This document shows positions 1 through 52,984 of a stretch of DNA of 64,000 nucleotides, in pieces (the stretch's first letter is position 1; the number at the start of each line of letters is the position of its first letter). This DNA comes from Octopus sinensis (lineage: Eukaryota), in contig NC_043023.1 of NCBI RefSeq assembly GCF_006345805.1, forward strand, positions 15,438,001 through 15,502,000. The letters run 5' to 3'. Position numbers and translations under genes: made by a program. Under the pieces are notes generated by a model. It was not told the DNA's origin. It saw only the letters and a list, made by a program, of their open reading frames with translations, and did no database searches.

Positions 1-541
1 ATGAGGAAAACAATTGTTGCTATCAATTCAGAAGAAATATTTCACCGTTATTCACCATAGATATATTATATAAACAGAGTTATTATCTATTATTTATAAC
101 GGCTGACATTCGTTTTTAAAACATGATCAATATTCATGATGTATCTCACGTAAAACTCCTTTATACGAGTATCTGAAATGACACAGAAACAGTAGAAGAT
201 ATAGGAAAGACTTAAAAAGCAAAGGTTTAACAATAAAAATTATAACTACATTTTCATAATGATAAACTGTGGATATAAACTTTTACCCGAATAAATTACA
301 CTTTAAAATGATACTCATGACACAAGACATTACTTTCGTCTATAATGACCTGAGTCATAAATCTAATACTTTCTCTAGTTTAGTTTCAATGCACCCAAAC
401 AAACAAAAGGAAAAGCAGTGTAAATAACGGACAGAGTCAAAACTATTGAAAAGGTTGCAAGACGCAATGAAAATTTTAGGAAAAAAGGAAATAAGTAAGA
501 AATAACTGCAAAATTTTACCGATGAGTGTGCTAAATTATAA
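1..541 (-). other. 5' UTR/intron 1 of an A-type ZNF gene whose coding exon lies left of the window; acceptor AG near 173
   Basis: Near-identical to 39866-40402 and to the reverse complement of 9740-10295, which precede the 38477 and 10452 ZNF ORFs. Contains the shared acceptor tgtgtcatttcAG on the minus strand. Confidence 0.85.
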
Positions 542-2800: not shown

Positions 2801-4488
2801 TCTATTTCTTTATTACCCACTAGGGGCCACGAAGAGGGAACATTACAAAACATGGGGGACATAAAACAATGCGATTAAAATTATGATTAAATGAATGTTA
2901 AAATGAAAAAATGATAACATGAAAGCGATGCTAACGGCCCCCTCCGCCAGCATCACTTACCTTTCCGTTTCCTATCACGATTCCAAAGTCTTTCACCTCA
3001 CCTTTCATTTCTCTCTCATACCTCTCTATCATATCATCCTTCATATATGCTGAGAAACAATTTATACGTAGTTCATTACACTTGCTCATCAAAGAGCCCA
3101 TAAGTTCAAAATCGAACACCGCATAGCTTCCGTCCTCATACTCCTGCCATACATTGTCTTCAAAAAGCCTTCTTGCGTTCTCTGTATCCCCCTTCCTCAC
3201 AACACATAAAAAGTAGGACTGGGGCCTTTGTATGTTCTGTGTGTCTGTTTTCGTTTTTCTTGTAGGCGGGGAGTGGGTGGGATTGCTGTTTGCAGGGGCA
3301 GGATGGGTCTCCAAGGGTGTGGGTGGTGTTGGGGTGGGTTGGGGCTTCGCACAGTTTTTCCTTTTCTCTTCTTTCTGCCCTCCTCACACTCTTTTTGCAT
3401 CTCCTCCTCCTCTGTCGTTTCCCTTTCCGTCTGCTTCTCTTTAATTTCTTCCTTTTTTGGGGCCTCCTCTTTTGGAGCTTCCTCAACGATTTCCTTTTCT
3501 CTTGGTGGGGGAGGGCAGAAGGCTCTTATGTGGCCCCTCAGGCCACACTTGTAACAACGTGGAGCTCTGCCCTCCACCCACACTCTCATAATCACGTCTC
3601 CCAATTTAATGCTCTCCGCCAGGTCCACCAGTACCTCGCTCTCCGCCTGCACGTTCAGCTCCACTGTTACGCCTCTCCAGCCCTCGGTCCTGACCGAGGC
3701 ATGGAGAATATCCACTTTCTCCTCGTGGCCGCTGATCACAGCCGCCACAATCCATTCAGCCTCAACGTTTGGTGGCACTCCCTCCACCCTTACTCGTGTA
3801 ATCCTTCTATTCAAGTACGTAGGTAAAAGTGTTACCTTTTCTGACTTCACCACCTTCACCGCCATCTTCCTCGCTGCAGTCTCACTTTTAAAATGTACCA
3901 CTACAGTACCGTACTTCGATCCTCGAGTCAGAAAAATGATTTCCTCCTCCGATCTTCTCAGGGCCTCCTCTATCCATTCCATGTTTACGATCTCTATTTT
4001 CTTTCTTTCGTTCACGAACACCCTGTAAATTATGGTCCTCTTATTGTACCATTCCTTTCTCTTTGGTGGTGGTTCCAGTTCCACCTCGCCGCTGTCCTTC
4101 CTCATATACCTCTGGAAACCTGGCAATTTTTCTAGGTTTATTTCTTTTTCCTGTTCCGTGTTCTTTTTTGCAACTCCTGCGTACGTTTTCCTGTTTTGTG
4201 TCTCCACATTATTTACATCACCGATTTGCTCGTCTTCAGAGTTTGATGTCTCCGACAAGCTCTCAAATATCCATTCTTCCTCTGACTCCTCCACTAGGGA
4301 GTGGTTATCCATCTCCTCCCGCTTGACAGGCCAAAACGGCCGTCAAAACAGAAAAAGTGTAACGCGCAGAACCAGCGGAACGCGAAACCGCTTTAGCGCC
4401 ATTCAAAATTTCCACAACAACAACAATTCTTTTTGATCTTTTTTACCGAATTTTACGAGCGTAAACAAAAAACACGACCGAGTGAGTA
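2801..4488 (-). mobile_element. ORF1-only (HAL1-like) non-autonomous L1/Tx1-clade retroelement, ~1.7 kb
   Basis: ~175-nt 5' UTR, ORF1, short 3' UTR ending gcccctagtgggtAATAAAgaaata. No endonuclease or RT sequence between ORF1 and the tail. Confidence 0.7.
3197..4312 (-). CDS. LINE ORF1p: RRM-like region plus CCHC zinc knuckle; the C-terminus probably continues by frameshift into 2931-3314
   Basis: TYAGVA motif, ITRVRVEGVPP RRM-like strand and CYKCGLRGHIRAFC (CX2CX4HX4C) followed by a charged low-complexity tail. This is typical of L1/Tx1 ORF1p. Confidence 0.8.
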   Translation of the reverse strand: MDNHSLVEESEEEWIFESLSETSNSEDEQIGDVNNVETQNRKTYAGVAKKNTEQEKEINLEKLPGFQRYMRKDSGEVELEPPPKRKEWYNKRTIIYRVFVNERKKIEIVNMEWIEEALRRSEEEIIFLTRGSKYGTVVVHFKSETAARKMAVKVVKSEKVTLLPTYLNRRITRVRVEGVPPNVEAEWIVAAVISGHEEKVDILHASVRTEGWRGVTVELNVQAESEVLVDLAESIKLGDVIMRVWVEGRAPRCYKCGLRGHIRAFCPPPPREKEIVEEAPKEEAPKKEEIKEKQTERETTEEEEMQKECEEGRKKRKGKTVRSPNPPQHHPHPWRPILPLQTAIPPTPRLQEKRKQTHRTYKGPSPTFYVL

Positions 4489-4571
4489 TCGACTAAAGGC
4501 ACTGCTCCAGCATGGCCACTGTCAAATGCCTGAAACATGTAAAATAGATAGGTTTCCCTATTTTCTTCCAT

Positions 4572-5581
4572 GTATCCATATTTATTATTGAAATATCACT
4601 TCCAGTATCGAACTGAAGTTTAATATTTATTCCAATCATTTTTACGTGTACAAATTTTCTCATTTGGGAGTCGAATTTTGTTTCTGTTGAGAGCCCTCTA
4701 GGATCTTTAATGGTTGATCTTCAGAATTTAGTTCTGCAGTGTGAATTTCTGTATATTCAGTTGTTGTAAGGCCTTTTACCAAAAGAAGACACCTGAACAT
4801 CTCAGGTGTAATTCTTTGAGTTTAAAAATATTCACACATTCTGTTAATTGTTCCTGCGTATGTGATAAAATCACCATCCTCTTTTTTCATTCTATTCCAA
4901 AACACCATCCAAGTGTTAGACAAGTTTTATCACCGAATATGTTAGACAGTAATTCTATTGTTTCTTTAAAACAAATTTCATTGAGTTTTTTGGGGTAATA
5001 TGAAATTAAAGTAATGTTCATACTCAGATGGGGCTCATTTATGTCATAATAACCTTACTTTTTCTGTGTCTGACCATGTCTTACAATCTTCCTTAAAAAT
5101 TACCTGCTGTAGTACAATGCAACAGTTATACCGTCCTCTGGGTTATAACTGGATTCATCGAGTCCAAAACGGCGTCTGGCAAAAATGTACTTCCCTTATT
5201 TTTGGACTTCTTTGAATAAAGCTCCAATAATTGTTGTTGTTGCTGCCTTTGTCGTTGATTTTGCAACAGTTTTAAAGAAGCTAATTAGTCTTCCATGATT
5301 TAACAATTTTGTATCACAAAAATTTGTTAACTGACCTGCAAGAGCTTCGAAACCCTCATCGCCAGATGTTGTAACATAATTGTTCCGTACAATAAATAAG
5401 ATAACCAGAAAATTGTAACAACAATCTAATGAACTAACAAATCTTTTACGAACCAACATTCAATATTCCTTAGGAAGTAAACCAAGCGACACCTTCCAAC
5501 TTCAGTTGACTCTGAACCGCAAACTCACTCAGATCGTTACTATTTATACTTTACTCGAGCCAGTCTACTCTCATCACAACA
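4572..5581 (-). mobile_element. Ty3/Gypsy relic: 5' LTR (5367-5581), PBS, degenerate gag, protease
   Basis: Reverse-complement copy of 13547-14555. Protease reads KLQFDTGSDISII. Confidence 0.8.
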
Positions 5582-6531
5582 GGTGCCATTCTAACCAGAT
5601 GCCCATCATAAATCCCTGCTTGGTGTCTGGTAAGAACAAGACCATGAAAACCTGCTCTACAGAATGATTTATCAAAAAATAAGTATGATGATAATCACTT
5701 GCATGGGTTGAGCGGGGATGTGCTTGAACCATAGGTAAAGTGGGGCATTAGGCTCTTGAAAAATATTTCCCACTCTACACCCAAAACTGTGACAAACAGC
5801 AATAAGCCTCCAGCTAGTGCCAGAATATGTGGGCAGTAGCACAAAGGGTGCAGATCCTGGGATCCCTGAGTGTGTCCAGCAGAGGATAACTGATCACGGC
5901 TGGGAACTGGAGTGTAATACATTTGTGTCAAAATAATATATCCTCAAGGAAACAGAGCAAATTAATATAATCAATATTGTTTGAATAAAAAACACAAATC
6001 GTAATTAGTGAGTTGATGCAAATGAGGAAAATGTGAAAAATGAATTTATTTTGTAAAAAGTAATACATTTGCTGTATTTTATTCAGCAGGACATCTGTTT
6101 TATCATTAATATTGTTATTGATCAATATGAATAAGTATATGTTTAGTTAAGGTAGATTATTGAGAGAATGATTTAGCACAGATTACACAGTCATAAGAAT
6201 CTTCTCCTGTATGAATATGTTTGTGTTTAGTTTATTATTTCTCTCTATGAAAGAATGACTTGTCACAGATGTCACAGTGATATGATTTCTCTCCTGTATG
6301 AATGTATTTGTGATGAGTTCAATATTGTTCCACAGAGAATGATTTACCTCAGGTATCACAGCAATAGAGTTTCTCTCCTGTATGAATACGTTTATAAGTA
6401 TATACAGCATATTCACAATAGAATGATTTGCTGCAGACATCACAGTCACATAGTTTCTCTCCAGTATGAGCAGACTTGTAATTAATTAAATATTTTCTTA
6501 AACGGAATAATTTACTGCAGATACCACAGTG

Positions 6532-7740
<1,209 letters not shown>

Positions 7741-9270
7741 TATTGTTCTATAGTATACAAACACAAAATATAATTTTGCCTCCTTTTTTATATATTTCTA
7801 TTGCTTATATTTCCAGCAGTCCCGATCTTCATCAATATCTGAAGATGATACAAACACCTTTGCAGATATCTCCCGCTCCAAACAGAATGTGAAATACTTT
7901 AGCAAATATTCCAGGCAATGATGGAAACAAATGTTGCCATCAATTCAGAAGAAATATTTCACAGTTTTCCACCATAGACAAATCATATAAACAGAGTTAT
8001 GTCAAATATTTATAACTTCTTCCATTAGGTGATCAATATTCATGAAGTGTCACTAACATTTCACCTCCTGAAATGACACAGAAACAGAAGAAGATATAGG
8101 AAAAACTTAAAAAGCAGAGATTCAACTATTAAAAAAAATATAACTACATCTTCAAAATGATAAACTGTGGATAAAATCCTTCAATTTGTCTTTGTAATTT
8201 ATTTATGGTAATTTATAATATGGTAACCCTTTTGTTACCATATTTCTTTTGAGATTCAGTGTGTTTCTTTCAATTATTTTAAATATAATAAAGAATTTAG
8301 TAAACTTAGTTATCATTCAACTAGTGTTGGCAACATAAATTGTAACTAAGGTTTCGTGGAAGATTTTAATTCAAAACTTATGAAAACAAGACATTTTACC
8401 ACAGAGCCAGAGCCGGTTTGGGCCGGGTTAGTAACAAAAGGGTGTGGTCTTTGAAATTTATTTTATTAAAATTATATGATACAACCTTGTGTAATGTCTA
8501 CATATAGACGGACTTCAGTTCCTCTTCCTTCAGATATTATGTAAAACATTATCCCTTTAGTGTTCAGATTATTCTGTTAAATGTAATTCTTTTTCACTCA
8601 AATTGTTTTGAATTAATCATGCAATATCTTATAGCTTTTAGGTTTCAATGATGTGATTGTTTATTTCTAGAATGTCAATGTAGGTTAGTGTGAGGGGCCA
8701 GATACCGCCAGTTTGAATATAAAACATGCAGAATATCTGGGCCTGATATGGCCGGTTTTAAACAATAAAGGGTTCAACTATAGGATATTGGACAATAATA
8801 TGATAAGTGACTACTGTTTAACCCTAGGTATCCCTGACTGAGCAGATCTATTATTAATGAAATTAGGTAATGTTCATGATTGTTACAACTTCTGTAACAG
8901 ATCAAACATAAACATAAACTACAATTTAGTGAACCAACCCATCATGACTTTCCTCTGGTAACTTTATTAATAATAAAAACAAAACTGCACTCACATATGT
9001 TGAAGGTGTGGTCACTAATTTAGAGAAAGTGTTCTGTGAATTGACATATGAAGAGTAGAGCCAGGACAGAATGGCGATCCTTCGGTATAGGTACACACGT
9101 GACTTTGTTTACATTTCTGAAGATAACATAAACCCTTTTCTCCCACCCCCCACCCACATATAAAAAAACACCTTTTTGAAATGTATCCGGTACTTCCGGA
9201 TGTACACCGGTACTTATACCGTAAGATCGCCTTTCTTTTTAAAACAAAGTAAATAAAACACAAACGCATA

Positions 9271-9336
9271 GGTACTACTAGCGAAGACTGGACCCGGTAC
9301 GCGCTAGCTAGTCGTAAGTAGTCGATCCTACAACGA
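9271..9336 (+). mobile_element. Single terminus of a GGTACT-type (Merlin-like) MITE
   Basis: Near-identical to the left end of the two-ended copy at 21787-22401. Truncated at the palindrome junction. Confidence 0.6.
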
Positions 9337-9817
9337 AAATTTTAGGAAAAAAGTAAATAAGTAAGAAATAACTGCAAAATTTTACCGATGAATGTGTTAA
9401 ATTATAAGGCACAAAAAGAAAATGACTCTCCGCAGACACAACAGAATATGCTTCAATACACGAATTCATATAAAGAACCTTGCAAACCAAATCCAAAAAC
9501 GAAATAGAATTAATATCTGTTTCTTTATTACCCACAAGGGGCGAAACACGGACGGGACAAACAAGGACAGACAAACGGATTAAGTCGATTACATTGACCC
9601 AGTGCGTAACTGGTACTTAATTTATCGACCCCGAAATTCTATTTCGTTTTTGGATTTGGTTTGCAAGATTCTTTATATGTATTCGTGTATTGAAGCATAT
9701 TCTGTTGTGTCTGGGGAGAGTCATTTTCTTTTTGTGCCTTATAATTTAACACATTCATCGGTAAAATTTTGCAGTTATTTCTTATTTCTTACTTATTTCC
9801 TTTTTTCCTAAAATTTT
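9336..9817. repeat. Inverted repeat (arms 9336-9510 and 9636-9817) with a partial SINE as spacer
   Basis: aaaattttaggaaaaaag...gaaatagaat pairs with attctatttc...ctttttcctaaaatttt. Confidence 0.9.
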
Positions 9818-10451
9818 CTTTGCATCTTGCAACCTTTTCAATAGTTTTGACTCTGTCCGTTATTTACACTGCTTTTCCTTTTGTTTGTTTGGGTGCATTG
9901 AAACTAAACTAGAGAAAGTATTAGATTTATGACTCAGGTCATTATAGACGAAAGTAATGTCTTGTGTCATGAGTATCATTTTAAAGTGTAATTTATTCGG
10001 GCAACAGTTTATATCCACAGTTTATCATTATGAAAATGTAGTTATAATTTTTATTGTTAAACCTTTGTTTTTTAAAGTCTTTCCTATATCTTCTACTGTT
10101 TCTGTGTCATTTCAGATACTCGTATAAAGGAGTTTTACGTGAGATACATCATGAATATTGATCATCTTTTGAAAACGAATGTCAGCCGTTATAAATAATA
10201 GATAATAACTCTGTTTATATAATATATCTATGGTGAATAACGGTGAAATATTTCTTCTGAATTAATAGCAACATTTGTTTTCCTCATTGCCAGGAATATT
10301 TACAAAAGTATTGCATATTCAGTTTGAATGTGAGAAAATCTGGAAAGGTGTTTGTATCATTTTCAGATATTCAAGTTCAGATTTGCTGTAGAAGATATAT
10401 ATAAAGAAGAAGGGGGAAATATATTTTCTATCTGTATACTACAGAACAATA

Positions 10452-12596
10452 ATGAATAGTCTGGAAATGTTAAAAGAAAGAGAAAAGTTATCAAACCAAT
10501 CTGATATCTGTAAAAAGACTTATTCTAATAAGGGAAATCTCACTGTTCACAAATTCATTCATGCAGGGGGGAAACAATATCATTGTGATATCTGTGGTAA
10601 ATCATTCTCTCAAAAAAGTCACCTTACTCATCACAAATACACTCATACTGGAGAGAAACCATATCAGTGTGATATCTGTGGTAAATCATTCTCTCAAAGC
10701 ACTGTCCTTTCTTATCACAAATCTGTTCATACTGGAGAGAAACCATATCACTGTGATATCTGTGGTAAATCATTCTCTACAAAATATAACCTTACTAAAC
10801 ACAAATACATTCATACAAGAGAGAAACCAAATCAATGTCATATTTGCGGTAAATCATTCTCTCATAGAAGTTCCCTTGATTCTCACACACATATTCATAC
10901 AGGAGAAAAACCACATCAGTGTGATGTTTGTGGTAAATCATTCTCTCAAAAAAGTAGCCTTAATTCTCACAAATACATTCATACAGGTGAGAAACCATAT
11001 CAGTGTGATATCTGTGATAAATCCTTTTCATTAAAAAGTTATTTAACTACTCACAAATCCATTCATACAGGAGAGAAACCATATCGATGTGATATTTGTG
11101 GTAAATCATTCACTCAGAAATATAGCCTCACTCATCACAAATACACTCATACTGGAGAGAAACCATATCAATGTGATATTTGTGGTAAATCATTCTCTCA
11201 AAAGACTGCCCTTTCTTATCACAAAGTCGTTCATACTAGAGAGAAACCATATCACTGTGATATTTGTGGTAAATCATTCCCTAAAAAATATAACCTTACT
11301 AAACACAAATCCATACATACAGGAGAGAAACCATATCACTGTGATATTTGTGGTAAATCATTCCCTAAAAAATATAACCTTACTAAACACAAATCCATAC
11401 ATACAGGAGAGAAACCATATCACTGTGATATTTGTGGTAAATCATTCACTCAGAAATGTAACCTTAATTCTCACAAATATATTCACACAGGAGAGAAACC
11501 ATATCAGCGTGATATCTGTAATAAATCCTTTTCATTAAAAAGTTATTTAACCACTCACAAACTAACACATACAGGTGAGAAGCCATATCACTGCGATATT
11601 TGTGGTAAATCATTCTGTTATATGAGTAGCCTTGATTCTCACAAACACATACATACAGGAGAGAAACCATATCACTGTGATATTTGTGGTAAATCATTCT
11701 GTTATATGAGTAGCCTTGATTCTCACAAACACATACATACAGGAGAGAAACCATATCACTGTGATATTTGTGGTAAATCATTCTGTTATATGAGTAGCCT
11801 TGATTCTCACAAACACATTCATACAGGAGAGAAACCATATCACTGTGATATTTGTGGTAAATCATTCTGTTATATGAGTAGCCTTGATTCTCACAAACAC
11901 ATACATACAGGAGAGAAACCATATCACTGCGATATTTGTGGTAAATCATTCTGTTATATGAGTAGCCTTGATTCTCACAAACACATACATACAGGAGAGA
12001 AACCATATCACTGTGATATTTGTGGTAAATCATTCTGTTATATGAGTACCCTTGATTCTCACAAACACATTCACACAGGACAGAAACCACATCACTGCGA
12101 TATTTGTGGTAAATCATTCTGTTATACGAGTACCCTTGATTCTCACAAACACATTCACACAGGACAGAAACCACATCACTGCGATATTTGTGGTAAATCA
12201 TTCTGTTATACGAGTACCCTTGATTCTCACAAACACATTCACACAGGACAGAAACCACATCACTGCGATATTTGTGGTAAATCATTCTGTTATACGAGTA
12301 CCCTTGATTCTCACAAACACATTCACACAGGACAGAAACCACATCACTGCGATATTTGTGGTAAATCATTCTGTTATACGAGTACCCTTGATTCTCACAA
12401 ACACATTCATACAGGAGAGAAACCACATCACTGCGATATTTGTGGTAAATCATTCTCTCAAAAAAGTTACCTTGATTCTCACAAATCAGTTCATACAGGT
12501 GAGAAACCATATCGGTGCTATATCTGTGGTAAATCATTCTCTCAGAAGAGGTATTTAAATAGACACAAATGCATTAATACAGGGGACAAACCATAG
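10452..12596 (+). CDS. A-type C2H2 zinc-finger protein, 714 aa, 25 fingers (3 degenerate)
   Basis: Uninterrupted ORF of 28-aa CX2CX12HX3H units with TGEKP linkers. Acceptor ttcAG at 10115. Confidence 0.95.
11580..12420 (+). repeat. Ten near-identical 84-bp finger repeats
   Basis: 5x CYMSSLDSH, 1x CYMSTLDSH, 4x CYTSTLDSH. Confidence 0.95.
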
Positions 12597-13546
12597 CACT
12601 GTAGTATCTGCAGTAAATTATTCCGTTTAAGAAAATATTTAATTAATTACAAGTCTGCTCATACTGGAGAGAAACTATGTGACTGTGATGTCTGCAGCAA
12701 ATCATTCTCTCAGGAATATGCTGTATATACTTATAAACGTATTCATACAGGAGAGAAACTCTATTGGTGTGATATCTGCGGTAAATCATTCTCTGTGGAA
12801 CAATATTGAACTCATCACAAATACATTCATACAGGAGAGAAATCATATCACTGTGACATCTGGGACAAGTCATTCTTTCATAGAGAGAAATAATAAACTA
12901 AACACAAACATATTCATACAGGAGAAGATTCTTATGACTGTGTAATCTGTGCTAAATCATTCTCTCAATAATCTACCTTAACTAAATATATACTTATTCA
13001 TATTGATCAATAACAATATCAATGATAAAACAGATGTCCTGCTGAATAAAATACAGCAAATGTATTACTTTTTACAAAATAAATTTATTTTTCACATTTT
13101 CCTCATTTGCATCAACTCACTAATTACGATTTGTGTTTTTTATTCAAACAATATTGATTATATTAATTTGCTCTGTTTTCTTGAGGATATATTATTTTGA
13201 CACAAATGTATTACACTCCAGTTCCCAGCCATGATCAGTTATCCTCTGCTGGACACACTCAGGGATCCCAGGATCTGCACCCTTTGTGCTACTGCCCACA
13301 TATTCTGGCACTAGCTGGAGGCTTATTGCTGTTTGTTACAGTTTTGGGTGTAGAGAGGGAAATATTTTTCAAGAGCCTAATGCCCCACTCTACCTATGGT
13401 TCAAGCACATCCCCGCTCAACCCATGCAAGTGATTATCATCATACTTATTTTTTGCTAAATCCTTCTGTAGAACAGGTTTTCATGGTCTTGTTCTTACCA
13501 GACACCAAGCAGGGATTTATGATGGGCATCTGGTTAGAATGGCACC
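12597..13546 (+). other. A-type 3' UTR: decayed finger repeats followed by a conserved AT-rich segment with AATAAA (~13045)
   Basis: Repeated at 5582-6531, 37059-37990, 51798-52748 and 55536-56485; a diverged homologue lies at ~62100-62480. Confidence 0.7.
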
Positions 13547-14555
13547 TGTTGTGATGAGAGTAGACTGGTCCGAGTAAAGTATAAATAGTAACAATCTGAG
13601 TGGGTTTGCGGTTCAGAGTCAAGTGAAGTTGGAAGGTGTCGCTTGGTTTACTTCCTAAGGAATATTGAATGTTGGTTCGTAAAAGATTTGTTAGTTCATT
13701 AGATTGTTGTTACAATTTTCTGGTTATCTTATTTATTGTACGGAACAATTATGTTACAACATCTGGCGATGAGGGTTTCGAAGCTCTTGCAGGTCAGTTA
13801 ACAAATTTTTGTGATACAAAATTGTTAAATCATGGAAGACTAATTAGCTTCTTTAAAACTGTTGCAAAATCAACAACAAAGGCAGCAACAACAACAATTA
13901 TTGGGGCTTTATTCAAAGAAGTCCAAAAATGAGGGAAGTACATTTTTGCCAGACGCCGTTTTGGACTCGATGAATCCAGTTATAACCCAGAGGACGGTAT
14001 AACTGTTGCATTGTACTACAGCAGGTAATTTTTAAGGAAGATTGTAAGACATGGTCAGACACTGAAAAAGTAAGGTTATTATGACATAAATGAGCCCCAT
14101 CTGAGTATGAACATTATTTTAATTTCACATTACCCAAAAAAACTCAATGAAATTTGTTTTAAAGAAACAATAGAATTACTGTCTAACATATTCGGTGATA
14201 AAACTTCTCTAACACTTGGATGGTGTTTTGGAATATAATGAAAAAAGAGGATGGTGATTTTATCACATACGCAGGAACAATTAACAGAAAGTGTGAATAT
14301 TTTTAAACTCAAAGAATTTACACCTGAGATGTTCAGGTGTCTTCTTTTGGTAAAAGGCCTTACAACAACTGAATATACAGAAATTCACACTGCAGAACTA
14401 AATTCTGAAGATCAACCATTAAAGATCCTAGAGGGCTCTCAACAGAAACAAAATTCGACTCCCAAATGTGGAAATTTGTACACGTAAAAATGATTGGAAT
14501 ACATATTAAACTTCAGTTCGATACTGGATGTGATATTTCAATAATAAAAATGGAT
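13547..14555 (+). mobile_element. Ty3/Gypsy LTR retrotransposon relic: LTR 13547-13761, PBS, gag, aspartic protease
   Basis: LTR TGTTGTGA...TTACAACA with TATAAATA, followed by the PBS TGGCGATGAG. Broken frames read SSYNPEDGIT...IFKEDCKTWSDTEKVRLL...ICFKETIELLSNIFGDKTSL...DFITYAGTIN...FKLKEFTPEMFRCLLLVKGL (K02A2.6-like gag), then KLQFDTGCDISII (protease DTG). Confidence 0.85.
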
Positions 14556-14556
14556 A

Positions 14557-14921
14557 CATGTTTCAGGCATTTGACAATGGCCATGCTGGAGCAGTGCCTT
14601 TAGTCGAGCAAATAAACCCAGGACTTGTTCTTTGTAAGCCTAGTACTTATTCTATTTTTCTCTTTTGCCAAACTGCTATGTGACGGGGGTGTAAACACAC
14701 CAGCATCGGTTGTCAAGCAATGTTTGGGGGATAAACATATACACACACACACATTATACGATGGGCTTCTTTCAGTTTCCGTCTACCAAATCCACTTACA
14801 AGGCTTTGGTCGGCCCGAGGCTATAGTAGAAGACACTTGTCCAAAGTGCTACACAGCGAGACTGAACCTGGGACCATGTGGTTGGTAAGCAAGCTACTTA
14901 CCACACAGCCACTCCTACGCC
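14557..14921 (-). mobile_element. tRNA-head SINE, family S2
   Basis: Minus strand starts ggcgtaggagTGGCTGTGTGGtaag...GGTTCAGTC (A/B boxes) and contains an (AC/AT)n tract. Copies at 27343, 35403, 50762, 57925 and 58320. Confidence 0.8.
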
Positions 14922-16990: not shown

Positions 16991-17313
16991 CAGCGCAAAC
17001 TTGTACGAAGTACAGACATCTGCGTGTTAATATACATCTCAGGAAAAACAGGCTTCTCATATTCAATAAGATTGGTGGCACCCTGGTAGTACATATCATT
17101 GTGGAAAACGTAAAACCACCTATAATTGTTATATATATATTAATTACCAGAGTGACCCACGACTTGACTGGTTACAGGCGCTGAGTACTATTTACGAAAA
17201 GTGGTCCCGCTGCACACCATCGCGCTAGCTAGTTGTGACTAGTCAATCCTACAACTACCTGGCGCGAGTGCACGTATGCAAATTAATAGATGCACGCATG
17301 TGCAAAGCACGTA

Positions 17314-17775: not shown

Positions 17776-18427
17776 AGATCTTTTCCTTTTGAACGGCAGT
17801 TTTCAACACAATTTTTAGTTAACTAAACACTTTTAAACTTCGTATACTGGTAGAATGTGTCAAAAAACATTTTTTTCTCTTGGCTTTCTTGAGAAAATTG
17901 TAATTTGTAAGTTTAATGTAGTTTAATTTTTAGAATTTTAACCAATCAATGGCCTCTATTGAGCTAAAATCATTTGCTGCGTCCAAAACTGAGACAACAT
18001 CACCCTAACCCTAAATTCTAGCCTTTCCTTTTTTTTTTTCTCAAATGTTAAATTAATTTAAGGATAACAATTACGAAAAAAAAAAACTCAACAAAAACAA
18101 AATGAATAATTTTAGACACACGCGAAACGATTAAATTAATTTAACAATTAAGAAAAAAAAAATGAAAGGCACAAATTTAAGGTTAGGGTTAGTGACAGGA
18201 TGTTGCCTCAGTTTTAGACGCAGCAAATAATTTTAGCTCAATAGAGGGCATAGGATTGGTTAAAATTCGAAAAATTAAACTACATTAAACGAACAAATTA
18301 CAATTTTCTCAAGAAAGCCAAAAGAAAAAAATGTTTATTTTGATACATTCTACCAGTATACGAAGTTTTAAAGTGTTTAGTTAACTAGAAATTGTGTTGA
18401 AAACTGCCGTTCAAAAGGAAAAGATTC
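17776..18427. mobile_element. GGATC-TIR MITE abutting the ZNF 3' end; no TSD
   Basis: ~250-bp TIRs (agatcttttcc...ggaaaagattc). The flanks are not direct repeats. Confidence 0.85.
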
Positions 18428-18460
18428 GACTTAGAATGATTTACTGCAGATATTACAGTG

Positions 18461-19918
18461 CTATGGTTTCTCTCCTGTATGAATGTTTTTATGAGAGGTT
18501 AAAGAGCGCAAGCAAGACAATGATTTACCACAAATATCACACTCATACAGTTTCTCTCCTGTATGAATGGATTTGTGATAAGTAAGGCTATGCTTCCGGG
18601 AGAATGATTTACCACAAATACGACATTGATATGGTTTCTCTCCTGTATGAATGTGTTTGTGAAAATCAGGGTGACTTTTTTGAGAGAATGATTTACCACA
18701 AATACGACATTGATATGGTTTCTCTCTTGTATGAATGAATTTGTGATTAGTAAGGTGAATTTTTTGAGAGAATGATTTACCACAAATATCACACTGATAT
18801 AGTTTCTCACCTGTATGAATGGATTTGTGAGAATTAAGGTTACTTTTTTGAGGGAATGATTTACCACAAATATGACACTGATTTGGTTTCTCACCTGTGT
18901 GAATGTATTTGTGATAAGTAAGGCTACTCTTATGGGAGAATGAGTTACCACAAATATCACAGTGATATGGTTTCTCTCCTGTATGACTGTATTTGTCTTT
19001 AGTTAAGTCACCTAACTGGGAGAATGATATAACACAAATATCACAGGGATGTGGTTTCTCCCCTGTATGAATGTATTTGTGATAGGTAAGGCTCTGCTTA
19101 TGGGAAAATGATTTACCACAAATACGACATTCATATGGTTTCTCACCTGTATGAATGAATTTGTGAGTAGTTAAATTATATTTTAATGCAAAATATTTAC
19201 CACAGATGTCACAGTGATAAGGTTTCTCTCCTGTATGAATGGATTTGTGAGAGGTAAGGCTACTGATATGAGAGAATGATTTACCACAAATATCACACTG
19301 ATATGGTTTCTCACCTGTATGACTGTATTTGTGTCTAGTTAGGTCACCTAACTGGGAGAATGATATACCACATATATAACAGGGATGTGGTTTCTTCCCT
19401 GTATGACTGACTTTGTGATAAGTAAGGCTATGCTTATAGGGGAATGATTTACCACAAATATCACAGTGATATGGTTTCTCACCTGTATGAATGAATTTGT
19501 GATTAGTAAGGTGAATTTTTTGAGAGAATGTTTTACCACAAATATCACACTGATATGGTTTCTCACCTGTATGAATGAATTTGTGAGTAGTTAAATTATA
19601 TTTTAATGCAAAAGATTTACCACAGATGTCACAGTGATATGGTTTCTCTCCTGTATGAGTGGATTTGTGTCTAGTAAGGTGACTTTTATCAGAGAATGAT
19701 TTACCACAAATATCACAGTGATATGGTTTCTCACCTGTATGACTGTATTTGTGAGAGGTAAGGTTACTTTTCTGAGAGAATGATTTACCACAGACATCAC
19801 AGTGATATGGCTTCCTACCTGCATGAATGAATTTGTGAACAGTGAGATTTCCCTTACTAGAAAAAGTCTTTTTACAGATATCACATTGGTATGATAATTT
19901 TTCTCTTTCTTTTGTCAT
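18461..19918 (-). CDS. B-type C2H2 ZNF, ~485 aa, 17 fingers (1 with His to Asp)
   Basis: Intact ORF. The paralogous first ATG is mutated to TTG, so the likely start is MTKERE at 19918. Acceptor at 20264. Confidence 0.92.
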   Translation of the reverse strand: MTKEREKLSYQCDICKKTFSSKGNLTVHKFIHAGRKPYHCDVCGKSFSQKSNLTSHKYSHTGEKPYHCDICGKSFSDKSHLTRHKSTHTGEKPYHCDICGKSFALKYNLTTHKFIHTGEKPYQCDICGKTFSQKIHLTNHKFIHTGEKPYHCDICGKSFPYKHSLTYHKVSHTGKKPHPCYICGISFSQLGDLTRHKYSHTGEKPYQCDICGKSFSHISSLTSHKSIHTGEKPYHCDICGKYFALKYNLTTHKFIHTGEKPYECRICGKSFSHKQSLTYHKYIHTGEKPHPCDICVISFSQLGDLTKDKYSHTGEKPYHCDICGNSFSHKSSLTYHKYIHTGEKPNQCHICGKSFPQKSNLNSHKSIHTGEKLYQCDICGKSFSQKIHLTNHKFIHTREKPYQCRICGKSFSQKSHPDFHKHIHTGEKPYQCRICGKSFSRKHSLTYHKSIHTGEKLYECDICGKSLSCLRSLTSHKNIHTGEKP

Positions 19919-21357
19919 CTCGTGAGGATTCAATATTGTTCTATAGTATACAAGCACAACATATAATTTTGCTTCCTTTTTTATATATTTCTATTGCTTA
20001 TATTTCCAGCAGTTCCGATCTTCATCAATATCTGAAGATGATACAAACACCTTTGCAGCAGATATCTCCCGCTCCAAACAGAATGTGAAAGACATTAGCA
20101 AATATTCCAGGCAATGATGGAAACAAATGTTGCCATTAATTCAGAAGAAATATCTCACAGTTTTCCACCATAGACAAATCGTATAAACAGAGTTATGTCA
20201 AATATTTATAACATCTTCCATTAGATGATCAATATTCATGAAGTATCACTAACATTTCACCTCCTGAAATGACACAGAAACAGAAGAAGATATAGGAAAG
20301 ACTTAAAAAGCAGAGATTCAACTATTAAAAAGAATATAACTACATCTTCATAATGTTAAACTGTGGATATTATCCTTTAATTTGTCTTTGAAATTTATTT
20401 ATGGTAATTTATAATATGGTAACCCTTTTGTTACCATATTTCTTTTGAGATTCAGTGTGTTTCTTTCAATTATTTTAAATATAATAAAGAACTTAGTAAA
20501 CTAACTTAGTTATCATTCAACTAGTGTTAGGAACATAAATTGTAACTAAGGTTCGGTGGAAGATTTTAATTCAAAACTTATGAAAACAAGACATTTTACC
20601 ACAGAGCCAGAGCCAGTTTTGGCCGGGTTAGTAACAAAAGGGTGTGGTCTTTGAAATTTATTTTGTTATTAAAATTATATGATACAAACTTGTATAATGT
20701 CTACATATACACAGACTTCAGTTCCTCTTCCTTCAGATATTATGTAAAACATTATCCCTTTAGTGTTCAGATTATTCTGTTAAATGTAATTCTTTTTCAC
20801 TCAAATTGTTTTGAATTAATCATGCATTATCTTATGGCTTTGAGGTTTCAATGATGTGATTGTTTATTTCTAGAATGTCAATGTAGGTTAGGTGTGAGAG
20901 GCCAGTTTGAATATAAAACATGTAGAATATCTGGGCCTGATATGGCTGGTTTAAACAATAAAGGGTTCAACTCTAGGATATTGGACAATAATATGATAAG
21001 TGACTACTGTTTAACCCTAGGTTATCCCTGACTGAGCACATCTATTATTAATGAAATTAGGTAATATTCATGATTGTAACAACTTCTGTAACAGATCAAA
21101 CATAAACTAGAATTTAGTGAACCAACCCATCATGACTTTTCCTCTTGTAACTTTATTAATAATAAAAACAAACTGCACTCACATATGTTGAAGGTGTGGT
21201 CACTAATTTCGAGAAAGTGTTCTGTGAATTGACGTATGAAGAGTAGAGCCAGGACAGAATGGCGATCCTTCGGTATAGGTACACACGTGACTTTGTTTAC
21301 ATTTCTGAACCCTAACAGAAACCCTTTTCTCCCACCCCTAACCCTAACAGAAACACT

Positions 21358-21632
21358 CATCACCATCATTGTTCGTCCGTGGTCGAGACAATGGAATTTA
21401 CAATGCTACGCCAGACTTCACAGTCCATCATGGCATTACGTAGGTACTGTTGCTCGATGCCTGTATCCCTGGAGATTACATCAGGGTAGGAGAGTGTGCG
21501 CCCTCTGGTATTGCGAGTAGATGGCTTCCAGAGGAGGAGAGTAGAAATTACCTCTTTTTCAGCTCTACAACAATGTCCAGCACACTGGACTCTCCTACCT
21601 TTCACAAGAGATGACACAGGTGGTAGTTTCCC
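21358..21632 (-). mobile_element. 5'-truncated RTE-type LINE 3' end
   Basis: RRVQCAGHCCRAEKEVISTLLLWKP...YPDVISRDTG...NAMMDCEVWRSIV followed by a (GAT)-like tail. Absent from the paralogous sites at ~9130 and ~42090. Confidence 0.75.
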
Positions 21633-21786
21633 ATATATTTGCATTTACAGAAACCCTAACCCCCCCCCCCCCACTATAAAAAAAAACTTTTTTGAAATGT
21701 ATCCAGTACTTCCGGAAGTACACCGGTACTTATACCGTAAGATCGCCTTTCTTTTTAAAACAAAGTAAATAAAACACAAACACACA

Positions 21787-22401: not shown

Positions 22402-22828
22402 CATCGCCAGTATATGACATTTGCCGATTCTGTCTACAAAAGGCTGTATCTGCTTTTTATCATAGTGCTATCACTGGCCACATGTTTCAGTTAGCTATTG
22501 ATGTTTTATGATGTTGCAGATTATTTATTCTGAGAAGCTGAAATGGACAGAATTATTAACGTGTATCATTTTGACAGAATAAACAGCAAATACAGATGTT
22601 TAGCAAATGATACATCTGTGATAAAACAACAAACAGCTTTGAATGGACACAACCAGCAAATGGATTATCTACCAAAATAATTGAAATTAAAAACCAGGTG
22701 CTTCACTGGACAATAGAATTAATATCGATTTCAGACTACTATTATTTAAAACTATCGATACTGTCTGGATTTTCCAATTAGCCAGATACATAGGCTTTTA
22801 CTAAAAAGAAAATATGTATTACAACCTA

Positions 22829-37990: not shown

Positions 37991-39703
<1,713 letters not shown>

Positions 39704-40322
39704 TATTGTTCTGTAGTATACAGACAGAAAATATATTTCTCCCTTCTTCTTTATATATATCTTCTACAGCAAATCTGATCTTAAATATCTGAAAATGATA
39801 CAAACACCTTTCCAGATTTTCTCACATTCAAACACAATGCAAAATACTTTTGTAAATATTCCTGGCAATGAGGAAACAAATGTTGCTATTAATTCAGAAG
39901 AAATATTTCACCGTTATTCACCATAGATATATTATACAAACAGAATTATTATCTATTATTTATAACGGCTGACATTCGTTTTCAAAACATGATCAATATT
40001 CATGATGTATCTCACGTAAAACTCCTTTATACGAGTATCTGAAATGACACAGAAACAGTAGAAGATATAGGAAAGACTTAAAAAGCAAAGGTTTAACAAT
40101 AAAAATTATAACTACATTTTCATAATGATAAACTGTTGCCCGAATAAATTACACTTTAAAATGATACTCATGACACAAGACATTACTTTCGTCTATTATG
40201 ACCTGAGTCATAAATCTAATACTTTCTCTAGTTTAGTTTCAATGCACCCAAACAAACAAAAGGAAAAGCAGTGTAAATAACGGACAGAGTCAAAACTATT
40301 GAAAAGGTTGCAAGACGCAAAG

Positions 40323-41896
40323 AAAATTTTAGGAAAAAAGGAAATAAGTAAGAAATAAGAAATAACTGCAAAATTTTACCGATGAGTGTGTTAAATTATA
40401 AGGCACAAAAAGAAAATGACTCTCCCCAGACGCAACAGAATATGCTTCAATACACGAATTCATATAAAGAACCTTGCAAACCAAATCAAAAAACGAAATA
40501 GAATTAATATCTGTTTCTTTATTACCCACAAGGGGCGAAACACGGACGGGACAAACAAGGACAGACAAACGGATTAAGTCGATCACATTGACCCCAGTGC
40601 GTAACTGGTACTTAATTTATCGACCCCGAAAGGATGAAAGGCAAAGTCGACCTTGGCGGAATTTGAACTCAGAACGTAACGGCGGACGAAATTAATATCG
40701 ATGTCAGACTAGCAACATTGAATACTTTCATTATTGTCTGGAGTTTCGAATTTTCCAGGTTCTTCTGCTTTCACTAAAAATAAAATATGTACGATATCTT
40801 ACCTGTTATGATAAATAAATCAGTGCTAAAAGTCAATTAACGCAAACCACACCAAAAAAGCCATTCAGCGGGAAACGTAATTTAAAGAAAGCTCAAAAAA
40901 TAGACATGGAATGTAGACGAAACGAACTGATATCCGGATGTTGTATATATCGTAATACTATAAATTTATCGGATGCTAAAACTAAGTTGGTAAATTCTCA
41001 ATGTTTTTTATTGGTATAATTACTTTTCAAAAATGTGAGTTATGAGGAAAAATCCAAATGATGACAAAACATACAAAACTGACTGCTTATTTTCATATCT
41101 ATTGGTACTTTTCCACTATCCTGTTACCGAACCCTTAAATTACAGGGACGGAAAGAAACCAACAGGACTTATCAAAGAGGGACGGAGGGAAAACTGGAAG
41201 ACTCGTGTGTGTTATTTCTACCTGTATTCGAGAACCATTGTTACTTTGTTTACATTCCTGTAACTTCGTTGTATATGTTACGATATATACAACATCCGGA
41301 TGTTCAGTTGTTTCGTCGACATTCCATGTCTATTTTTTGAGCTTTCTTTAAATTACGTTTCCCGCTGAATGGCTTTTTTGGTGTGGTTTGCGTTAATTGA
41401 CTTTTAGCACTGATTTATTTATCATAACAGGTAAGATATCGTACATATTTTATTTTTATTGAAAGCAGAAGAACCTGGAAAATTCGAAACTCCAGACAAT
41501 AATGAAAGTATTCAATGTTGCTAGTCTGACATCGATATTAATTTCGTCCGCCGTTACGTTCTGGGTTCAAATTCCGCCGAGGTCGACTTTGCCTTTCATC
41601 CTTTCGGGGTCGATAAATTAAGTACCAGTTACGCACTGGGTCAATGTGATCGACTTAATCCGTTTGTCTGTTCTTGTTTGTTTCGTCCGTGTTTCGCCCC
41701 TTGTGGGTAATAAAGAAACAGGTATTAATTCTATTTGGTTTGCAAGGTTCTTTATATGAATTCGTGTATTGAAGCATATTCTGTTGTGTCTGGGGAGAGT
41801 CATTTTCTTTTTGTGCCTTATAATTTAACACACTCATCGGTAAAATTTTGCAGTTATTTCTTATTTCTTACTTATTTACTTTTTTCCTAAAATTTT
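40323..41896. repeat. 1.57-kb palindrome: arms 40323-40955 and 41278-41896, ~320-bp spacer
   Basis: Each arm contains exon 1, the donor, intron start and an S1 SINE with TSD aattaatatc. Confidence 0.95.
40802..41432. promoter_or_regulatory. Bidirectional promoter with two outward-facing exon-1 copies (donors at 40802 minus, 41431 plus)
   Basis: CAG|GTAAGA on both strands, an ETS-like CCGGATGT and the conserved exon-1 motif in both arms. Confidence 0.6.
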
Positions 41897-42670
41897 CGTT
41901 GTAGGATCGACTACTTACGACTAGCTAGCGCGTACCGGGTCCAGTCTTCGCTAGTAGTACCTATGCTTTTGTGTTTTATTTACTTTGTTTTAAAAAGAAA
42001 GGCGATCTTACGGTATAAGTACCGGTGTACTTCCGGAAGTACTGGATACATTTCAAAAAGGTGTTTTTTTTATATGGGGGGGGGGTTCTGTTATCTTTAG
42101 AAATGTAAACAAAGACACGTGTGTACCTATACCGAAGGATCGCCATTCTGTCCTGTCTCTACTCTTCATACGTCAATTCACAGAACACTTTCTCTAAATT
42201 AGTGACCACACCTTCAACATATGTGAGTGCAGTTTGTTTTTATTATTAATAAAGTTACGAGAGGAAAAGTCATGATGGGTTGGTTCACTAAATTGTAGTT
42301 TATGTTTATGTTTGATCTGTTACAGAAGTTGTAACAATCATGAACATTACCTAATTTCATTAATAATAGATCTGCTCAGTCAGGGATAACCTAGGGTTAA
42401 ACATTAGTCACTCATCATATTATTGTCCAATATCCTATAGTTGAACCCTTTATTGTTTAAACTGGCCATATCAGGCCCAGATATTCTGCATGTTTTATAT
42501 TCAAACTGGCGGTATCTGGGCCCTCACACCTAACCTACATTGACATTCTAGAAATAAACAATCACATCATTGAAACCTCAAAGCCATAAGATATTGCATG
42601 ATTAATTCAAAACAATTTGAGTGAAAAAGAATTACATTTAACAGAATAATCTGAACACTAAAGGGATAAT

Positions 42671-52890: not shown

Positions 52891-52984
52891 TTTATTTTTA
52901 GTGAAAGCAGAAGAACCTGGAAAATTCGAAACTCCAGACAATAATGAAAGTATTCAATGTTGCTAGTCTGACATCGATATTAAT

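What the first reader, a model, noticed from the sequence alone, without database searches (positions are those of the whole stretch)
9336..9817. Collapsed copy of the promoter palindrome leaves an intact 25-finger ORF without exon 1
This is the 40.3-41.9 kb palindrome with its centre deleted (junction cgaccccgaa|attctatttcg, 2-nt microhomology), as expected for cruciform resolution. Both exon-1 copies are gone, so the intact 714-aa ORF (10452) and the chimeric gene (7740) have acceptors but no recognisable first exon. The 23701 and 53653 loci are also orphaned. Such loci could be silent donor cassettes for gene conversion, or alternative last exons spliced from a distant exon 1 (e.g. donor 22829 to acceptor 8068; donor 41431 to acceptor 53316). 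Both options are inference.
Basis: partly seen in the sequence, partly recalled or inferred. Interest (0 to 1): 0.7.

Follow-up and report, generated by a model that had tools for sequence, protein, structure and literature searches.

The report
Promoter-deleted copy of zinc-finger gene pair
In an octopus-type zinc-finger gene cluster, one recently duplicated head-to-head gene pair has lost 1.1 kb from its mirror-image intergenic region, including both putative first exons; this is ordinary structural turnover in a fast-evolving gene family, not a new kind of element.

Summary
Window 9331-9822 is an inverted repeat with arms 9331-9511 and 9635-9822 and a 123-nt spacer. It is the 40318-41901 palindrome minus about 1,096 bp.

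The two loci are inverted segmental duplicates, 95-99% identical in non-coding DNA, so the small one is the deleted form. The deletion removed:
- one SINE copy and part of the other;
- both copies of a conserved segment that ends in a CAG|GTAAG donor (the putative non-coding exon 1);
- the 322-nt centre.

No other exon-1-like segment lies between genes 7740 and 10452. Loci 23701 and 53653 also lack a usable one.

The mechanistic and functional readings are not supported by anything specific:
- A 1.1-kb deletion inside a 1.58-kb palindrome must cover the centre.
- The parent had a long spacer, which disfavours cruciforms.
- Gene 7740 is a pseudogene.
- The 714-aa ORF is open to the family's shared stop. 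However, 280 of its residues are ten near-identical, just-amplified fingers, and flank divergence is only about 2.5%, so its intactness says little.

Expression, long-range splicing and a donor-cassette role remain untested. The locus is ordinary and of low to moderate interest.

The parts
9331..9511 (.). Left arm of the small inverted repeat. It is the orthologue of the big palindrome's right outer arm, 41727-41901.
   Evidence: Two diagnostic sites pair it with 41727-41901.
9512..9634 (-). The 'spacer'. It is the 3' ~125 nt of a tRNA-derived SINE with the A and B boxes deleted. It is what remains of the SINE copy at 41544-41726.
   Evidence: The same family occurs in the Octopus sinensis locus L001 at up to 92% identity.
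9634..9635 (.). Deletion junction. It joins big-locus positions 41602 and 40505 with a 2-nt microhomology. The 40505 side lies inside the SINE's target-site duplication.
9635..9822 (.). Right arm of the small inverted repeat. It is the orthologue of 40318-40505.
9140..9330 (.). Flank on the 7740 side. It is CpG-undepleted and ends in a dispersed-repeat sequence. The palindrome's outer breakpoint (9333/9334) cuts that repeat.
10080..10115 (+). 36-nt polypyrimidine/AG acceptor block of the 10452 gene. It is identical at every specified position (one position left free) in 8 genes of the window.
10452..12596 (+). 714-aa C2H2 poly-zinc-finger ORF (called G2 in this report). It is open up to the stop that it shares with its paralogue at 39703.
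11586..12425 (+). Ten near-identical 84-nt finger units (fingers 14-23). This is a very recent amplification within the array, specific to this gene.
7111..7740 (-). Remnant ORF (209 aa) of the chimeric partner gene (G1). The 5' part is type II and the 3' part is type I. Many stops follow the ORF.
8068..8103 (-). Acceptor block of the 7740 gene.
40318..40955 (.). Left arm of the parent palindrome. It consists of segment A (40318-40505), a SINE with its 10-bp duplication AATTAATATC (40502-40699), and segment B, which carries the minus-strand donor at about 40802.
40956..41277 (.). Non-palindromic centre (C). It is contiguous with the left B in the paralogue at 2086-2673.
41278..41901 (.). Right arm of the parent palindrome. 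It carries the plus-strand donor at about 41431.
4489..6700 (.). Outer inverted arm. The 3' unit of G1 is 96-99% identical to the 3' unit of G2 (about 12400-14607) in inverted orientation, so the small repeat sits at the middle of a ~10-kb imperfect palindrome.

Best explanation
**Setting.** The window is a cluster of recently duplicated C2H2 poly-zinc-finger genes from an octopus-type genome.

**Inferred gene layout.** A short non-coding exon 1 (segment B) is followed by an intron, then by a strictly conserved acceptor block about 340 nt before the ATG, and then by one large finger exon.

**Inferred history.**
1. A SINE inserted into intron 1 of one gene, about 110 nt past the donor.
2. About 640 bp (A-SINE-B) was then duplicated in inverted orientation and fused into the upstream region of a neighbouring gene of the other subtype. 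This produced a head-to-head pair with a palindromic intergenic region holding two exon 1 copies (40318-41901).
3. The whole head-to-head unit was duplicated in inverted orientation to 4.5-14.6 kb.
4. In that copy a single ~1.1-kb deletion, joined with 2 nt of microhomology (end joining), removed both exon 1/promoter copies, the centre, one SINE and part of the other. This left the 492-bp inverted repeat at 9331-9822.

**What the repeat is.** The repeat itself is a scar with no function of its own.

**Consequences (inferred).**
- The pair has lost its normal transcription start sites.
- The 7740 gene is already a pseudogene.
- The 10452 gene is a recently orphaned copy. Its ORF is still open because too little time has passed and because 40% of it was amplified very recently. 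It is most likely silent or dependent on fortuitous transcription.

**Shown versus inferred.** The anatomy, the direction of change and the junction are shown. Promoter function of B, loss of expression and the repair pathway are inferred.
For: **Recent duplicate plus one deletion**
- 8548-14607 against the reverse complement of 36027-42670 is 95-99% identical outside the finger array, with a single 1,098-column gap.
- Flank divergence is 1.9-2.6%.

**Direction of change**
- Both outer palindrome junctions are shared between the two loci.
- The contiguous A-SINE-B order is also present upstream of 53653.
- B+C is contiguous at 2086-2673.
- The small locus joins A directly to an internal SINE position.

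**The SINE is real**
- It has a 10-bp duplication AATTAATATC, and empty sites exist at 22717 and 26879.
- A full-length copy with A and B boxes lies at 49700-49470.
- The same family is present in O. sinensis.

**B as exon 1**
- The donor AG|GTAAG or AG|GTAGG is kept in all five copies, which are only 64-77% identical overall.
- CpG observed/expected is 1.05-1.54 in the B copies, against 0.52 for the window.
- Exon 1 has only short ORFs (read).
- The 36-nt acceptor block is conserved without a mismatch at its specified positions in 8 genes.

**State of the genes**
- G1 is a pseudogene.
- G2's stop is the shared ancestral stop.
- Fingers 14-23 are near-identical.

**Taxon**
- The best protein hits to the N-terminus are from Octopus species, at 62-73% identity among the five best.
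Against: - No expression data exist here, so loss of transcription is an inference.
- G2 is the only one of the three type-I genes in the window with an uninterrupted ORF to the shared stop. The promoter-linked G6 (408 aa) and also G9 (553 aa) carry frameshifts. This is the opposite of what 'promoter-linked = alive, orphan = dead' would predict.
- All of G2's downstream splice signals are intact.
- One breakpoint falls within a few nt of the SINE/flank boundary. This coincidence is not explained by a random break.
- Promoter function of B is not shown.
Confidence: 0.6

Rival explanations
1. The deletion was caused by the palindrome itself. A hairpin or cruciform formed, its tip was cut, and the ends were joined. 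This is the 'centre-break' or cruciform-resolution mechanism that the first reader proposed.
For: - The deletion spans the symmetry axis and is asymmetric.
- It has a 2-nt microhomology junction and leaves a shorter, spaced inverted repeat.
- These are the features I recall for centre-break products (Cunningham et al. 2003). That paper was seen only in the reference list of PMC3300023 and was not read.
Against: - The parent has a 322-nt non-palindromic centre. Spacer length suppresses cruciform extrusion, and in a study cited by PMC3300023 Alu inverted repeats with a 52-bp spacer no longer stalled replication.
- Covering the centre is forced by geometry: 1,096 bp deleted within 1,584 bp.
- The breakpoints are 611 and 485 nt from the axis, so they are not paired stem positions.
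- The parent palindrome at 40.3-41.9 kb has persisted with 4.4% arm divergence.
Confidence: 0.2
2. The 10452 gene is still expressed from its own start site in the retained sequence (former intron 1, or the arms), or by read-through. Exon 1 is non-coding, so the protein would be unchanged and the gene would be functional.
For: - The ORF is uninterrupted to the family stop, while the paralogues G6 and G9 are frameshifted.
- The acceptor block and downstream signals are intact.
- A TATAAAGG motif lies 25 nt downstream of the acceptor block in type-I genes.
- Octopus C2H2 duplicates are reported to switch regulation often (PMC12513265).
Against: - The retained upstream sequence is 97-99% identical to intron 1 of the paralogue, so nothing new was gained.
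- The TATA-like motif is absent from the type-II genes.
- CpG observed/expected in 9823-10115 is 0.45, which is not promoter-like.
- ORF intactness carries little weight at about 2.5% divergence, with 280 aa just amplified.
- Three finger units have lost zinc ligands.
Confidence: 0.25
3. Orphan finger exons are alternative terminal exons spliced to a distant shared exon 1. Examples are donor 22829 to acceptor 8068, and donor 41431 to acceptor 53316.
For: - The window has 9 acceptor blocks (8 that match the 36-nt pattern exactly, plus the 23701 copy with a 3-nt gap) but only 5 exon-1 donors.
- For 7740 and 53653, a same-strand donor does lie upstream, at 14.7 and 11.9 kb.
Against: - For 10452 and 23701 there is no same-strand exon 1 upstream anywhere in the window.
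- 7740 is a pseudogene.
- Each proposed intron would have to skip a complete gene with its own 3' end.
- There are no transcript data.
Confidence: 0.07
4. The orphan copies are maintained as silent donor cassettes for gene conversion into expressed paralogues.
For: - Finger arrays are mosaics. Flanks are 95-99% identical while arrays are 77-90% identical.
- Individual fingers of G2 match G9, G6, G7/G4, G10 and G1 best, in patches.
- The 3' half of G1 is 96-99% identical to that of G2 in inverted orientation.
Against: - Exchange among tandem finger arrays is expected without any selected cassette role.
- Nothing shows directionality from orphans to expressed copies.
- The amplified fingers 14-23 have no close copy elsewhere in the window.
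Confidence: 0.05
5. The repeat is a mobile foldback or MITE-type element, or it is an assembly artefact.
For: - A real foldback insertion with a 13-bp duplication exists nearby at 42671-43164.
- Palindromes are common in the window.
Against: - The small repeat has no target-site duplication.
- Copies occur only in homologous gene contexts.
- Its parts are traceable to intron sequence plus a SINE.
- The arms differ at 5 positions plus an indel, and the locus differs from its parent by about 2.5%. That is not what a collapsed or chimeric assembly would give.
Confidence: 0.03

Closest known systems
Tandem/inverted C2H2 poly-zinc-finger gene clusters, including the octopus-specific C2H2 expansions (PMC12513265) and vertebrate KRAB-ZNF clusters
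   Same: - Krüppel-type fingers with TGEKP linkers, all in one large exon.
- Many young paralogues, pseudogenes among them.
- Finger arrays that change much faster than their flanks.
- Best protein hits are Octopus ZNFs.
   Different: - No KRAB, SCAN or BTB effector domain was seen in the ORFs examined: no effector-domain family appears among those listed for the 7740 and 53653 ORFs (which lists only the best 25 of 43 families for 7740).
- The 10452 ORF was not scanned against Pfam. Its translation shows only a ~15-residue leader before the first finger.
- Exon 1 appears to be non-coding.
- The head-to-head pair with a duplicated, palindromic first-exon region is a local peculiarity. I found no description of it in the papers I read.
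Stabilising central deletions of palindromes ('centre-break', Cunningham et al. 2003; palindrome resolution by deletion, Kogo et al. 2008). Both were seen only as references in PMC3300023.
   Same: An asymmetric deletion across the symmetry axis, a junction with 2 nt of microhomology, and a shorter spaced inverted repeat as the product.
   Different: The parent here already had a 322-nt spacer and 4.4% arm divergence, so structure-driven breakage is not needed and is less likely. The evidence does not separate it from an ordinary break with end joining.
Drosophila lola and mod(mdg4): common 5' exons joined to many alternative zinc-finger 3' exons (from my own knowledge, not checked here)
   Same: There are more finger-exon acceptors than first exons, on both strands of one cluster.
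   Different: - In those loci the common exons encode a BTB domain, and the joining is documented by transcripts.
- Here exon 1 is non-coding.
- Each finger exon has a full-length paralogue with its own exon 1.
- No transcript evidence exists here.
Cephalopod tRNA-derived SINEs (for the 123-nt spacer)
   Same: - A full-length copy has A-box-like and B-box-like motifs.
- There is a 10-bp target duplication, and empty paralogous sites exist.
- Dispersed copies occur in this window and in O. sinensis.
   Different: The piece in the small repeat is only the 3' ~125 nt. It was cut by the deletion and has no polymerase III promoter boxes.

Membership tests
Palindrome centre-break / cruciform-resolution deletion | The parent is a perfect or near-perfect palindrome with no spacer or a very short one. 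| tested here: not met
   The parent arms are 638/624 nt at 95.6% identity, but they are separated by 322 nt. Spacer length suppresses extrusion (PMC3300023).
Palindrome centre-break / cruciform-resolution deletion | The deletion spans the symmetry centre and is asymmetric. | tested here: met
   40506-41601 is deleted and the axis is at about 41116. The breakpoints lie 611 and 485 nt from it. This is uninformative, because a deletion of that size inside the palindrome must include the centre.
Palindrome centre-break / cruciform-resolution deletion | An end-joining junction with no homology or only microhomology. | tested here: met
   The overlap is TT, 2 nt. This is also expected for any end-joined break.
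Foldback / MITE transposon | A target-site duplication flanking the inverted repeat. | tested here: not met
   The flanks read ...cctacaac | and | tttgcatcttg..., with no direct repeat. The real foldback at 42671-43164 has a 13-bp duplication.
Foldback / MITE transposon | Dispersed copies in unrelated contexts. | tested here: not met
   The arm sequence is found only in paralogous upstream regions: 465-545, 40318-40505, 41727-41901 and 53044-53233.
tRNA-derived SINE (spacer 9512-9634) | Internal A and B boxes in full-length family members, a target-site duplication, and dispersed copies. | tested here: met
   - Full-length copy at 49700-49470.
- Duplication AATTAATATC and empty sites.
- Copies in the window and in the O. 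sinensis locus L001.
- ARAGORN calls no tRNA, as expected for a degenerate tRNA-like head.
C2H2 (Krüppel-type) poly-zinc-finger gene | Tandem C-X2-C-X12-H-X3-H units of 28 aa with TGEKP-type linkers. | tested here: met
   - 25 units in 10452-12596, of which 22 are canonical.
- The array has an 84-nt period with 27.5 copies.
- Pfam zf-C2H2 and zf-H2C2_2 match the paralogues.
Shared-first-exon / alternative finger-exon locus (lola, mod(mdg4) type) | Transcripts that join one common 5' exon set to many alternative 3' finger exons. | not testable with these tools
   No transcript data are available. Only the count of 9 acceptors against 5 donors.
Shared-first-exon / alternative finger-exon locus (lola, mod(mdg4) type) | The common exons encode a protein domain (BTB). 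| tested here: not met
   Exon 1 has only short ORFs that end in stops (read). The ATG lies in the finger exon in all genes.
Head-to-head gene pair with a bidirectional promoter | Divergent genes with start sites in a shared intergenic region. | tested here: inconclusive
   - Divergent orientation, mirrored donors at 40802(-) and 41431(+), and CpG observed/expected of about 1.5 are shown.
- The start sites themselves are not observable here.

The most novel reading that the evidence does not exclude
In octopus zinc-finger clusters a few non-coding first exons may serve many finger exons. 'Orphan' finger exons such as 10452, 53653 and 7740 would then be alternative terminal exons reached by long-range (or even trans-) splicing, making the cluster a combinatorial transcription unit of the lola/mod(mdg4) kind. 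A weaker variant is that the 180-bp hairpin left by the deletion is transcribed and yields small RNAs against the intron-1 sequence of its paralogues.
Probability: 0.07. Interest if true: 0.7.

Novelty: new member of a known kind. Interest (0 to 1): 0.28.

Why it matters
The locus gives a clean, datable example of how regulation is lost or rewired in a rapidly expanding transcription-factor family. The sequence of events is: a SINE insertion, an inverted duplication that hands one gene's first exon to its neighbour, duplication of the pair, and then a single deletion that removes both first exons.

Cephalopod C2H2 duplicates are reported to change expression module often (PMC12513265). Structural promoter turnover of this kind is one plausible cause.

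If the orphan 714-aa gene turned out to be expressed, it would point to start sites or splicing routes that are not visible in the sequence. As it stands, the feature is a by-product of cluster turnover.

Tried and rejected
- **Exact-sequence look-ups of six ORFs of the window**. None is on record, so no annotated gene model or exon structure could be borrowed.
- **Homology search with the whole 714-aa ORF**. It returned only generic vertebrate poly-ZNF hits at 60% identity or less and was uninformative on origin. An 80-aa N-terminal query pointed to Octopus.
- **dN/dS for orphan versus promoter-linked copies**. The ratio is about 0.5 for every pair. However, dS is 0.12-0.31 against a flank divergence of 0.02, which shows that the aligned fingers are not orthologous.
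- **Cross-species check in an O. sinensis ZNF locus**. The two share the SINE and other repeats, but that locus has no homologue of the arm or of exon 1, so there is no conservation evidence for exon 1 across species.
- **Rfam and ARAGORN**. Neither found anything.
- **MITE/foldback reading of the small repeat.** Rejected: there is no duplication and no dispersed copies.
- **The small form as ancestral.** Rejected: it would require an insertion that exactly restores a SINE and creates two mirrored exon 1 copies.
- **Arm-to-arm gene conversion**. Two sites favour it and two favour simple orthology, which is too few to decide.
- **The octopus genome paper (Albertin et al. 2015).** It is not held in the library.

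Full report
**What the window is.** The 64-kb window has about 36% G+C and is CpG-depleted (observed/expected 0.52). It holds ten or more C2H2 poly-zinc-finger genes on both strands. An 80-aa N-terminal query finds Octopus sinensis, O. vulgaris and O. bimaculoides proteins as best hits (62-73% identity among the five best). The window shares its SINE and several other interspersed repeats with an O. sinensis locus at 80-93% identity. I therefore treat it as an octopod zinc-finger cluster. The exact species is not identified, and no ORF of the window is on record.

The genes fall into two 5' types:
- Type I begins [14 protein letters not shown]: 10452 (G2), 39703 (G6), 53653 (G9), and one gene off the left edge of the window.
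- Type II begins [18 protein letters not shown]: 7740 (G1), 19933 (G3), 23701 (G4), 29599 (G5) and 43991 (G7).

**The observation.**
- An inverted repeat lies at 9331-9511 and 9635-9822, with 123 nt between the arms. Its predicted hairpin energy is 35 standard deviations below shuffles.
- The parent palindrome has arms 40318-40955 and 41278-41901 (95.6% identity) and a 322-nt centre.
- BLAST and a global alignment show that 8548-14607 is an inverted copy of 36027-42670. It is 95-99% identical everywhere outside the finger array, apart from one gap of 1,098 columns at 9634.
- A three-way alignment places the junction at 40505|41602 with a TT overlap.

**Anatomy of the parent.** Each arm consists of three segments:
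- A, 188 nt.
- A 5'-truncated tRNA-derived SINE.
- B, 263 nt.

The SINE is bounded by a 10-bp target-site duplication, AATTAATATC (40502 and 40690, mirrored in the right arm). Two paralogues keep the empty site ATAGAATTAATATCGAT (22717 and 26879). A full-length copy with A-box-like and B-box-like motifs lies at 49700-49470.

B has homologues at 2086-2673 (there continuing into the centre C, so left B plus C is the original arrangement), at 22720-22948 and at 26456-26885. A truncated piece lies at 52887-52982. In all full copies, which are only 64-77% identical overall, the motif AG|GTAAG or AG|GTAGG is kept. CpG is not depleted there (observed/expected 1.05-1.54). The stretch upstream of the donor has only short ORFs (read).

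Downstream, every gene has a 36-nt polypyrimidine/AG block about 340 nt before its ATG. It matches without a mismatch (one position left free) in eight genes of both types, although the surrounding sequence differs. It remains an inference without transcripts.

**How the palindrome arose.** Its right outer boundary (41899/41900, equivalent to 9333/9334) cuts a dispersed repeat. That repeat continues uninterrupted in the type-II paralogue G3 and in three other copies. The right arm is therefore an inverted duplicate of a type-I gene's A-SINE-B, fused into the upstream region of a type-II gene, which thereby acquired a copy of the type-I first exon. Both outer junctions are shared by the small and the big locus, so the palindrome predates their duplication.

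**Direction of change.** Four points show that the small locus is the derived form:
- The A-SINE-B order is also contiguous upstream of G9.
- B-C is contiguous at 2086.
- In the small locus A abuts an internal SINE position.
- For the short form to be ancestral, an insertion would have had to rebuild a SINE precisely and add two mirrored exon 1 copies.

**Mechanism of the deletion.** The junction has 2 nt of microhomology, which fits end joining.
- A 1,096-bp deletion inside a 1,584-bp palindrome must contain the axis.
- The breakpoints lie 611 and 485 nt from the axis, so they are not opposite each other on the stem.
- The parent has a 322-nt spacer. Spacer length suppresses extrusion, and in a study cited there Alu inverted repeats with a 52-bp spacer no longer stalled replication (PMC3300023).
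- The intact palindrome has survived long enough for 4.4% arm divergence.

One oddity remains. The left breakpoint lies inside the SINE's target-site duplication. I have no explanation for this beyond chance or a locally fragile AT-rich site.

**What was lost and what remains.** The deletion removed both B copies (both donors), the centre C, one SINE, and the 5' 61 nt of the other SINE, including its B box. No B-like sequence lies between 7740 and 10452.

Counting same-strand partners gives 9 acceptor blocks and 5 donors. The 23701 acceptor has a 3-nt gap. For G2 and G4 there is no same-strand donor upstream anywhere in the window.

**State of the genes.**
- G1 is a chimera. Its 5' part is type II, and its 3' unit is 96-99% identical to G2's in inverted orientation. 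It is broken after 209 aa.
- G2 is open for 714 aa up to a stop (NTGDKP*) that G6 shares and that is followed in both by the same decayed fingers. It is therefore 'intact' by family standards.
- G6 (promoter-linked) and G9 are frameshifted after 408 and 553 aa.

Three facts weaken the inference that G2 is under selection:
- Fingers 14-23 (840 nt, 280 aa) are ten tandem units, 79-84/84 identical to their neighbours. They have no close relative elsewhere in the window, so they are very young and keep the frame automatically.
- Flank divergence between the loci is only 1.9-2.6%, which leaves little time for decay.
- Three of the 25 units have lost a zinc ligand.

dS in aligned arrays is 0.12-0.31, against 0.02 in the flanks. 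This shows that the fingers are shuffled and not orthologous.

**Interpretation.** The best-supported reading is that 9331-9822 is the scar of a single end-joined deletion in a recent inverted duplicate of a head-to-head zinc-finger gene pair. The repeat has no function of its own. The pair lost both normal first exons. One partner is dead, and the other is a young orphan whose fate is open.

The rival readings cannot be excluded without transcript and population data, and I rank them low to moderate. They are structure-driven deletion, a cryptic own start site for G2, long-range splicing, and a donor-cassette role. Mosaic finger arrays and the G1/G2 inverted 3' arms do show that sequence moves between paralogues, including orphans. 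That is expected for such arrays and does not show a selected cassette function.

**Comparison and novelty.** The components are all known kinds:
- a lineage-specific C2H2 expansion in octopus (PMC12513265);
- a tRNA-derived SINE;
- an inverted segmental duplication;
- a central deletion of a palindrome;
- promoter-less duplicates.

The particular arrangement, a palindromic intergenic region that carries two copies of one first exon and a paralogue in which both were removed at once, was not described in the papers I read. It is still a new instance, not a new kind. Interest is low to moderate. It would rise only if transcripts showed that orphan finger exons are used.

Noticed in passing
window 42671-43164: A 494-bp palindromic (foldback/MITE-like) element is inserted in the big locus only. 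It is flanked by a 13-bp duplication CTAAAGGGATAAT (42658 and 43165). The small locus (8548) and the G3 locus (20751) keep the empty site.
   Followed up: partly
window 11586-12425: Ten tandem, near-identical 84-nt finger units ([13 protein letters not shown] / [13 protein letters not shown]) lie in the 10452 gene and have no close copy elsewhere in the window. A protein with ten identical fingers is unusual. The array may be behaving like a minisatellite.
   Followed up: partly
window 59823-62027: A 2.2-kb self-complementary palindrome (about 90% identity). Smaller ones lie at 33302-33488 and 47637-47816. Inverted repeats are frequent in this window.
   Followed up: no
window 173-208, 8068-8103, 10080-10115, 20264-20299, 29185-29220, 40039-40074, 43629-43664, 53281-53316: A 36-nt polypyrimidine/AG block matches at every specified position (one position left free) in eight genes of two subtypes, although the neighbouring sequence differs. 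It is probably the acceptor of the finger-exon unit.
   Followed up: partly
window-wide, e.g. 8548-14607 vs 36027-42670, 6100-9336 vs 18300-21852: Non-coding flanks of paralogues are 95-99% identical while their finger arrays are only 77-90% identical, with indels in multiples of 84 nt. The arrays are reshuffled much faster than the rest of the duplication unit.
   Followed up: partly
window 19931-19933 (minus strand): The start codon of the 19933 gene (G3) reads TTG where all its paralogues have ATG. This gene keeps its own exon 1 at about 22829.
   Followed up: no
window 52887-53355: Upstream of 53653, the A-SINE-B unit is cut 14 nt short of the donor by another duplication breakpoint (52887). 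It also carries a 296-bp internal deletion relative to 40122-40417. The 96 nt at 52887-52982 are 100% identical to 40693-40788.
   Followed up: partly
window 3197-4312 (minus strand): A 371-aa ORF with no Pfam match. It contains a CX2CX4HX4C zinc-knuckle motif (CYKCGLRGHIRAFC) and acidic/basic low-complexity ends, so it resembles a retroelement gag/ORF1. It sits in the most G+C-rich part of the window.
   Followed up: no
window 49302-49700: A full-length SINE is followed head-to-tail by a 5'-truncated copy that starts at the same internal position as the copies in the palindrome arms. A similar pair lies at 33992-34280.
   Followed up: no
window 9268-9333, 17165-17270, 21770-21862, 22347-22404, 32760-32865, 47055-47150: A dispersed CpG-rich repeat (GGTACTACT...CGCTAGCTAGTCGTAA...) occurs at these sites. 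In the G3 locus two copies lie in inverted orientation about 510 nt apart, which suggests the ends of a DNA transposon.
   Followed up: partly
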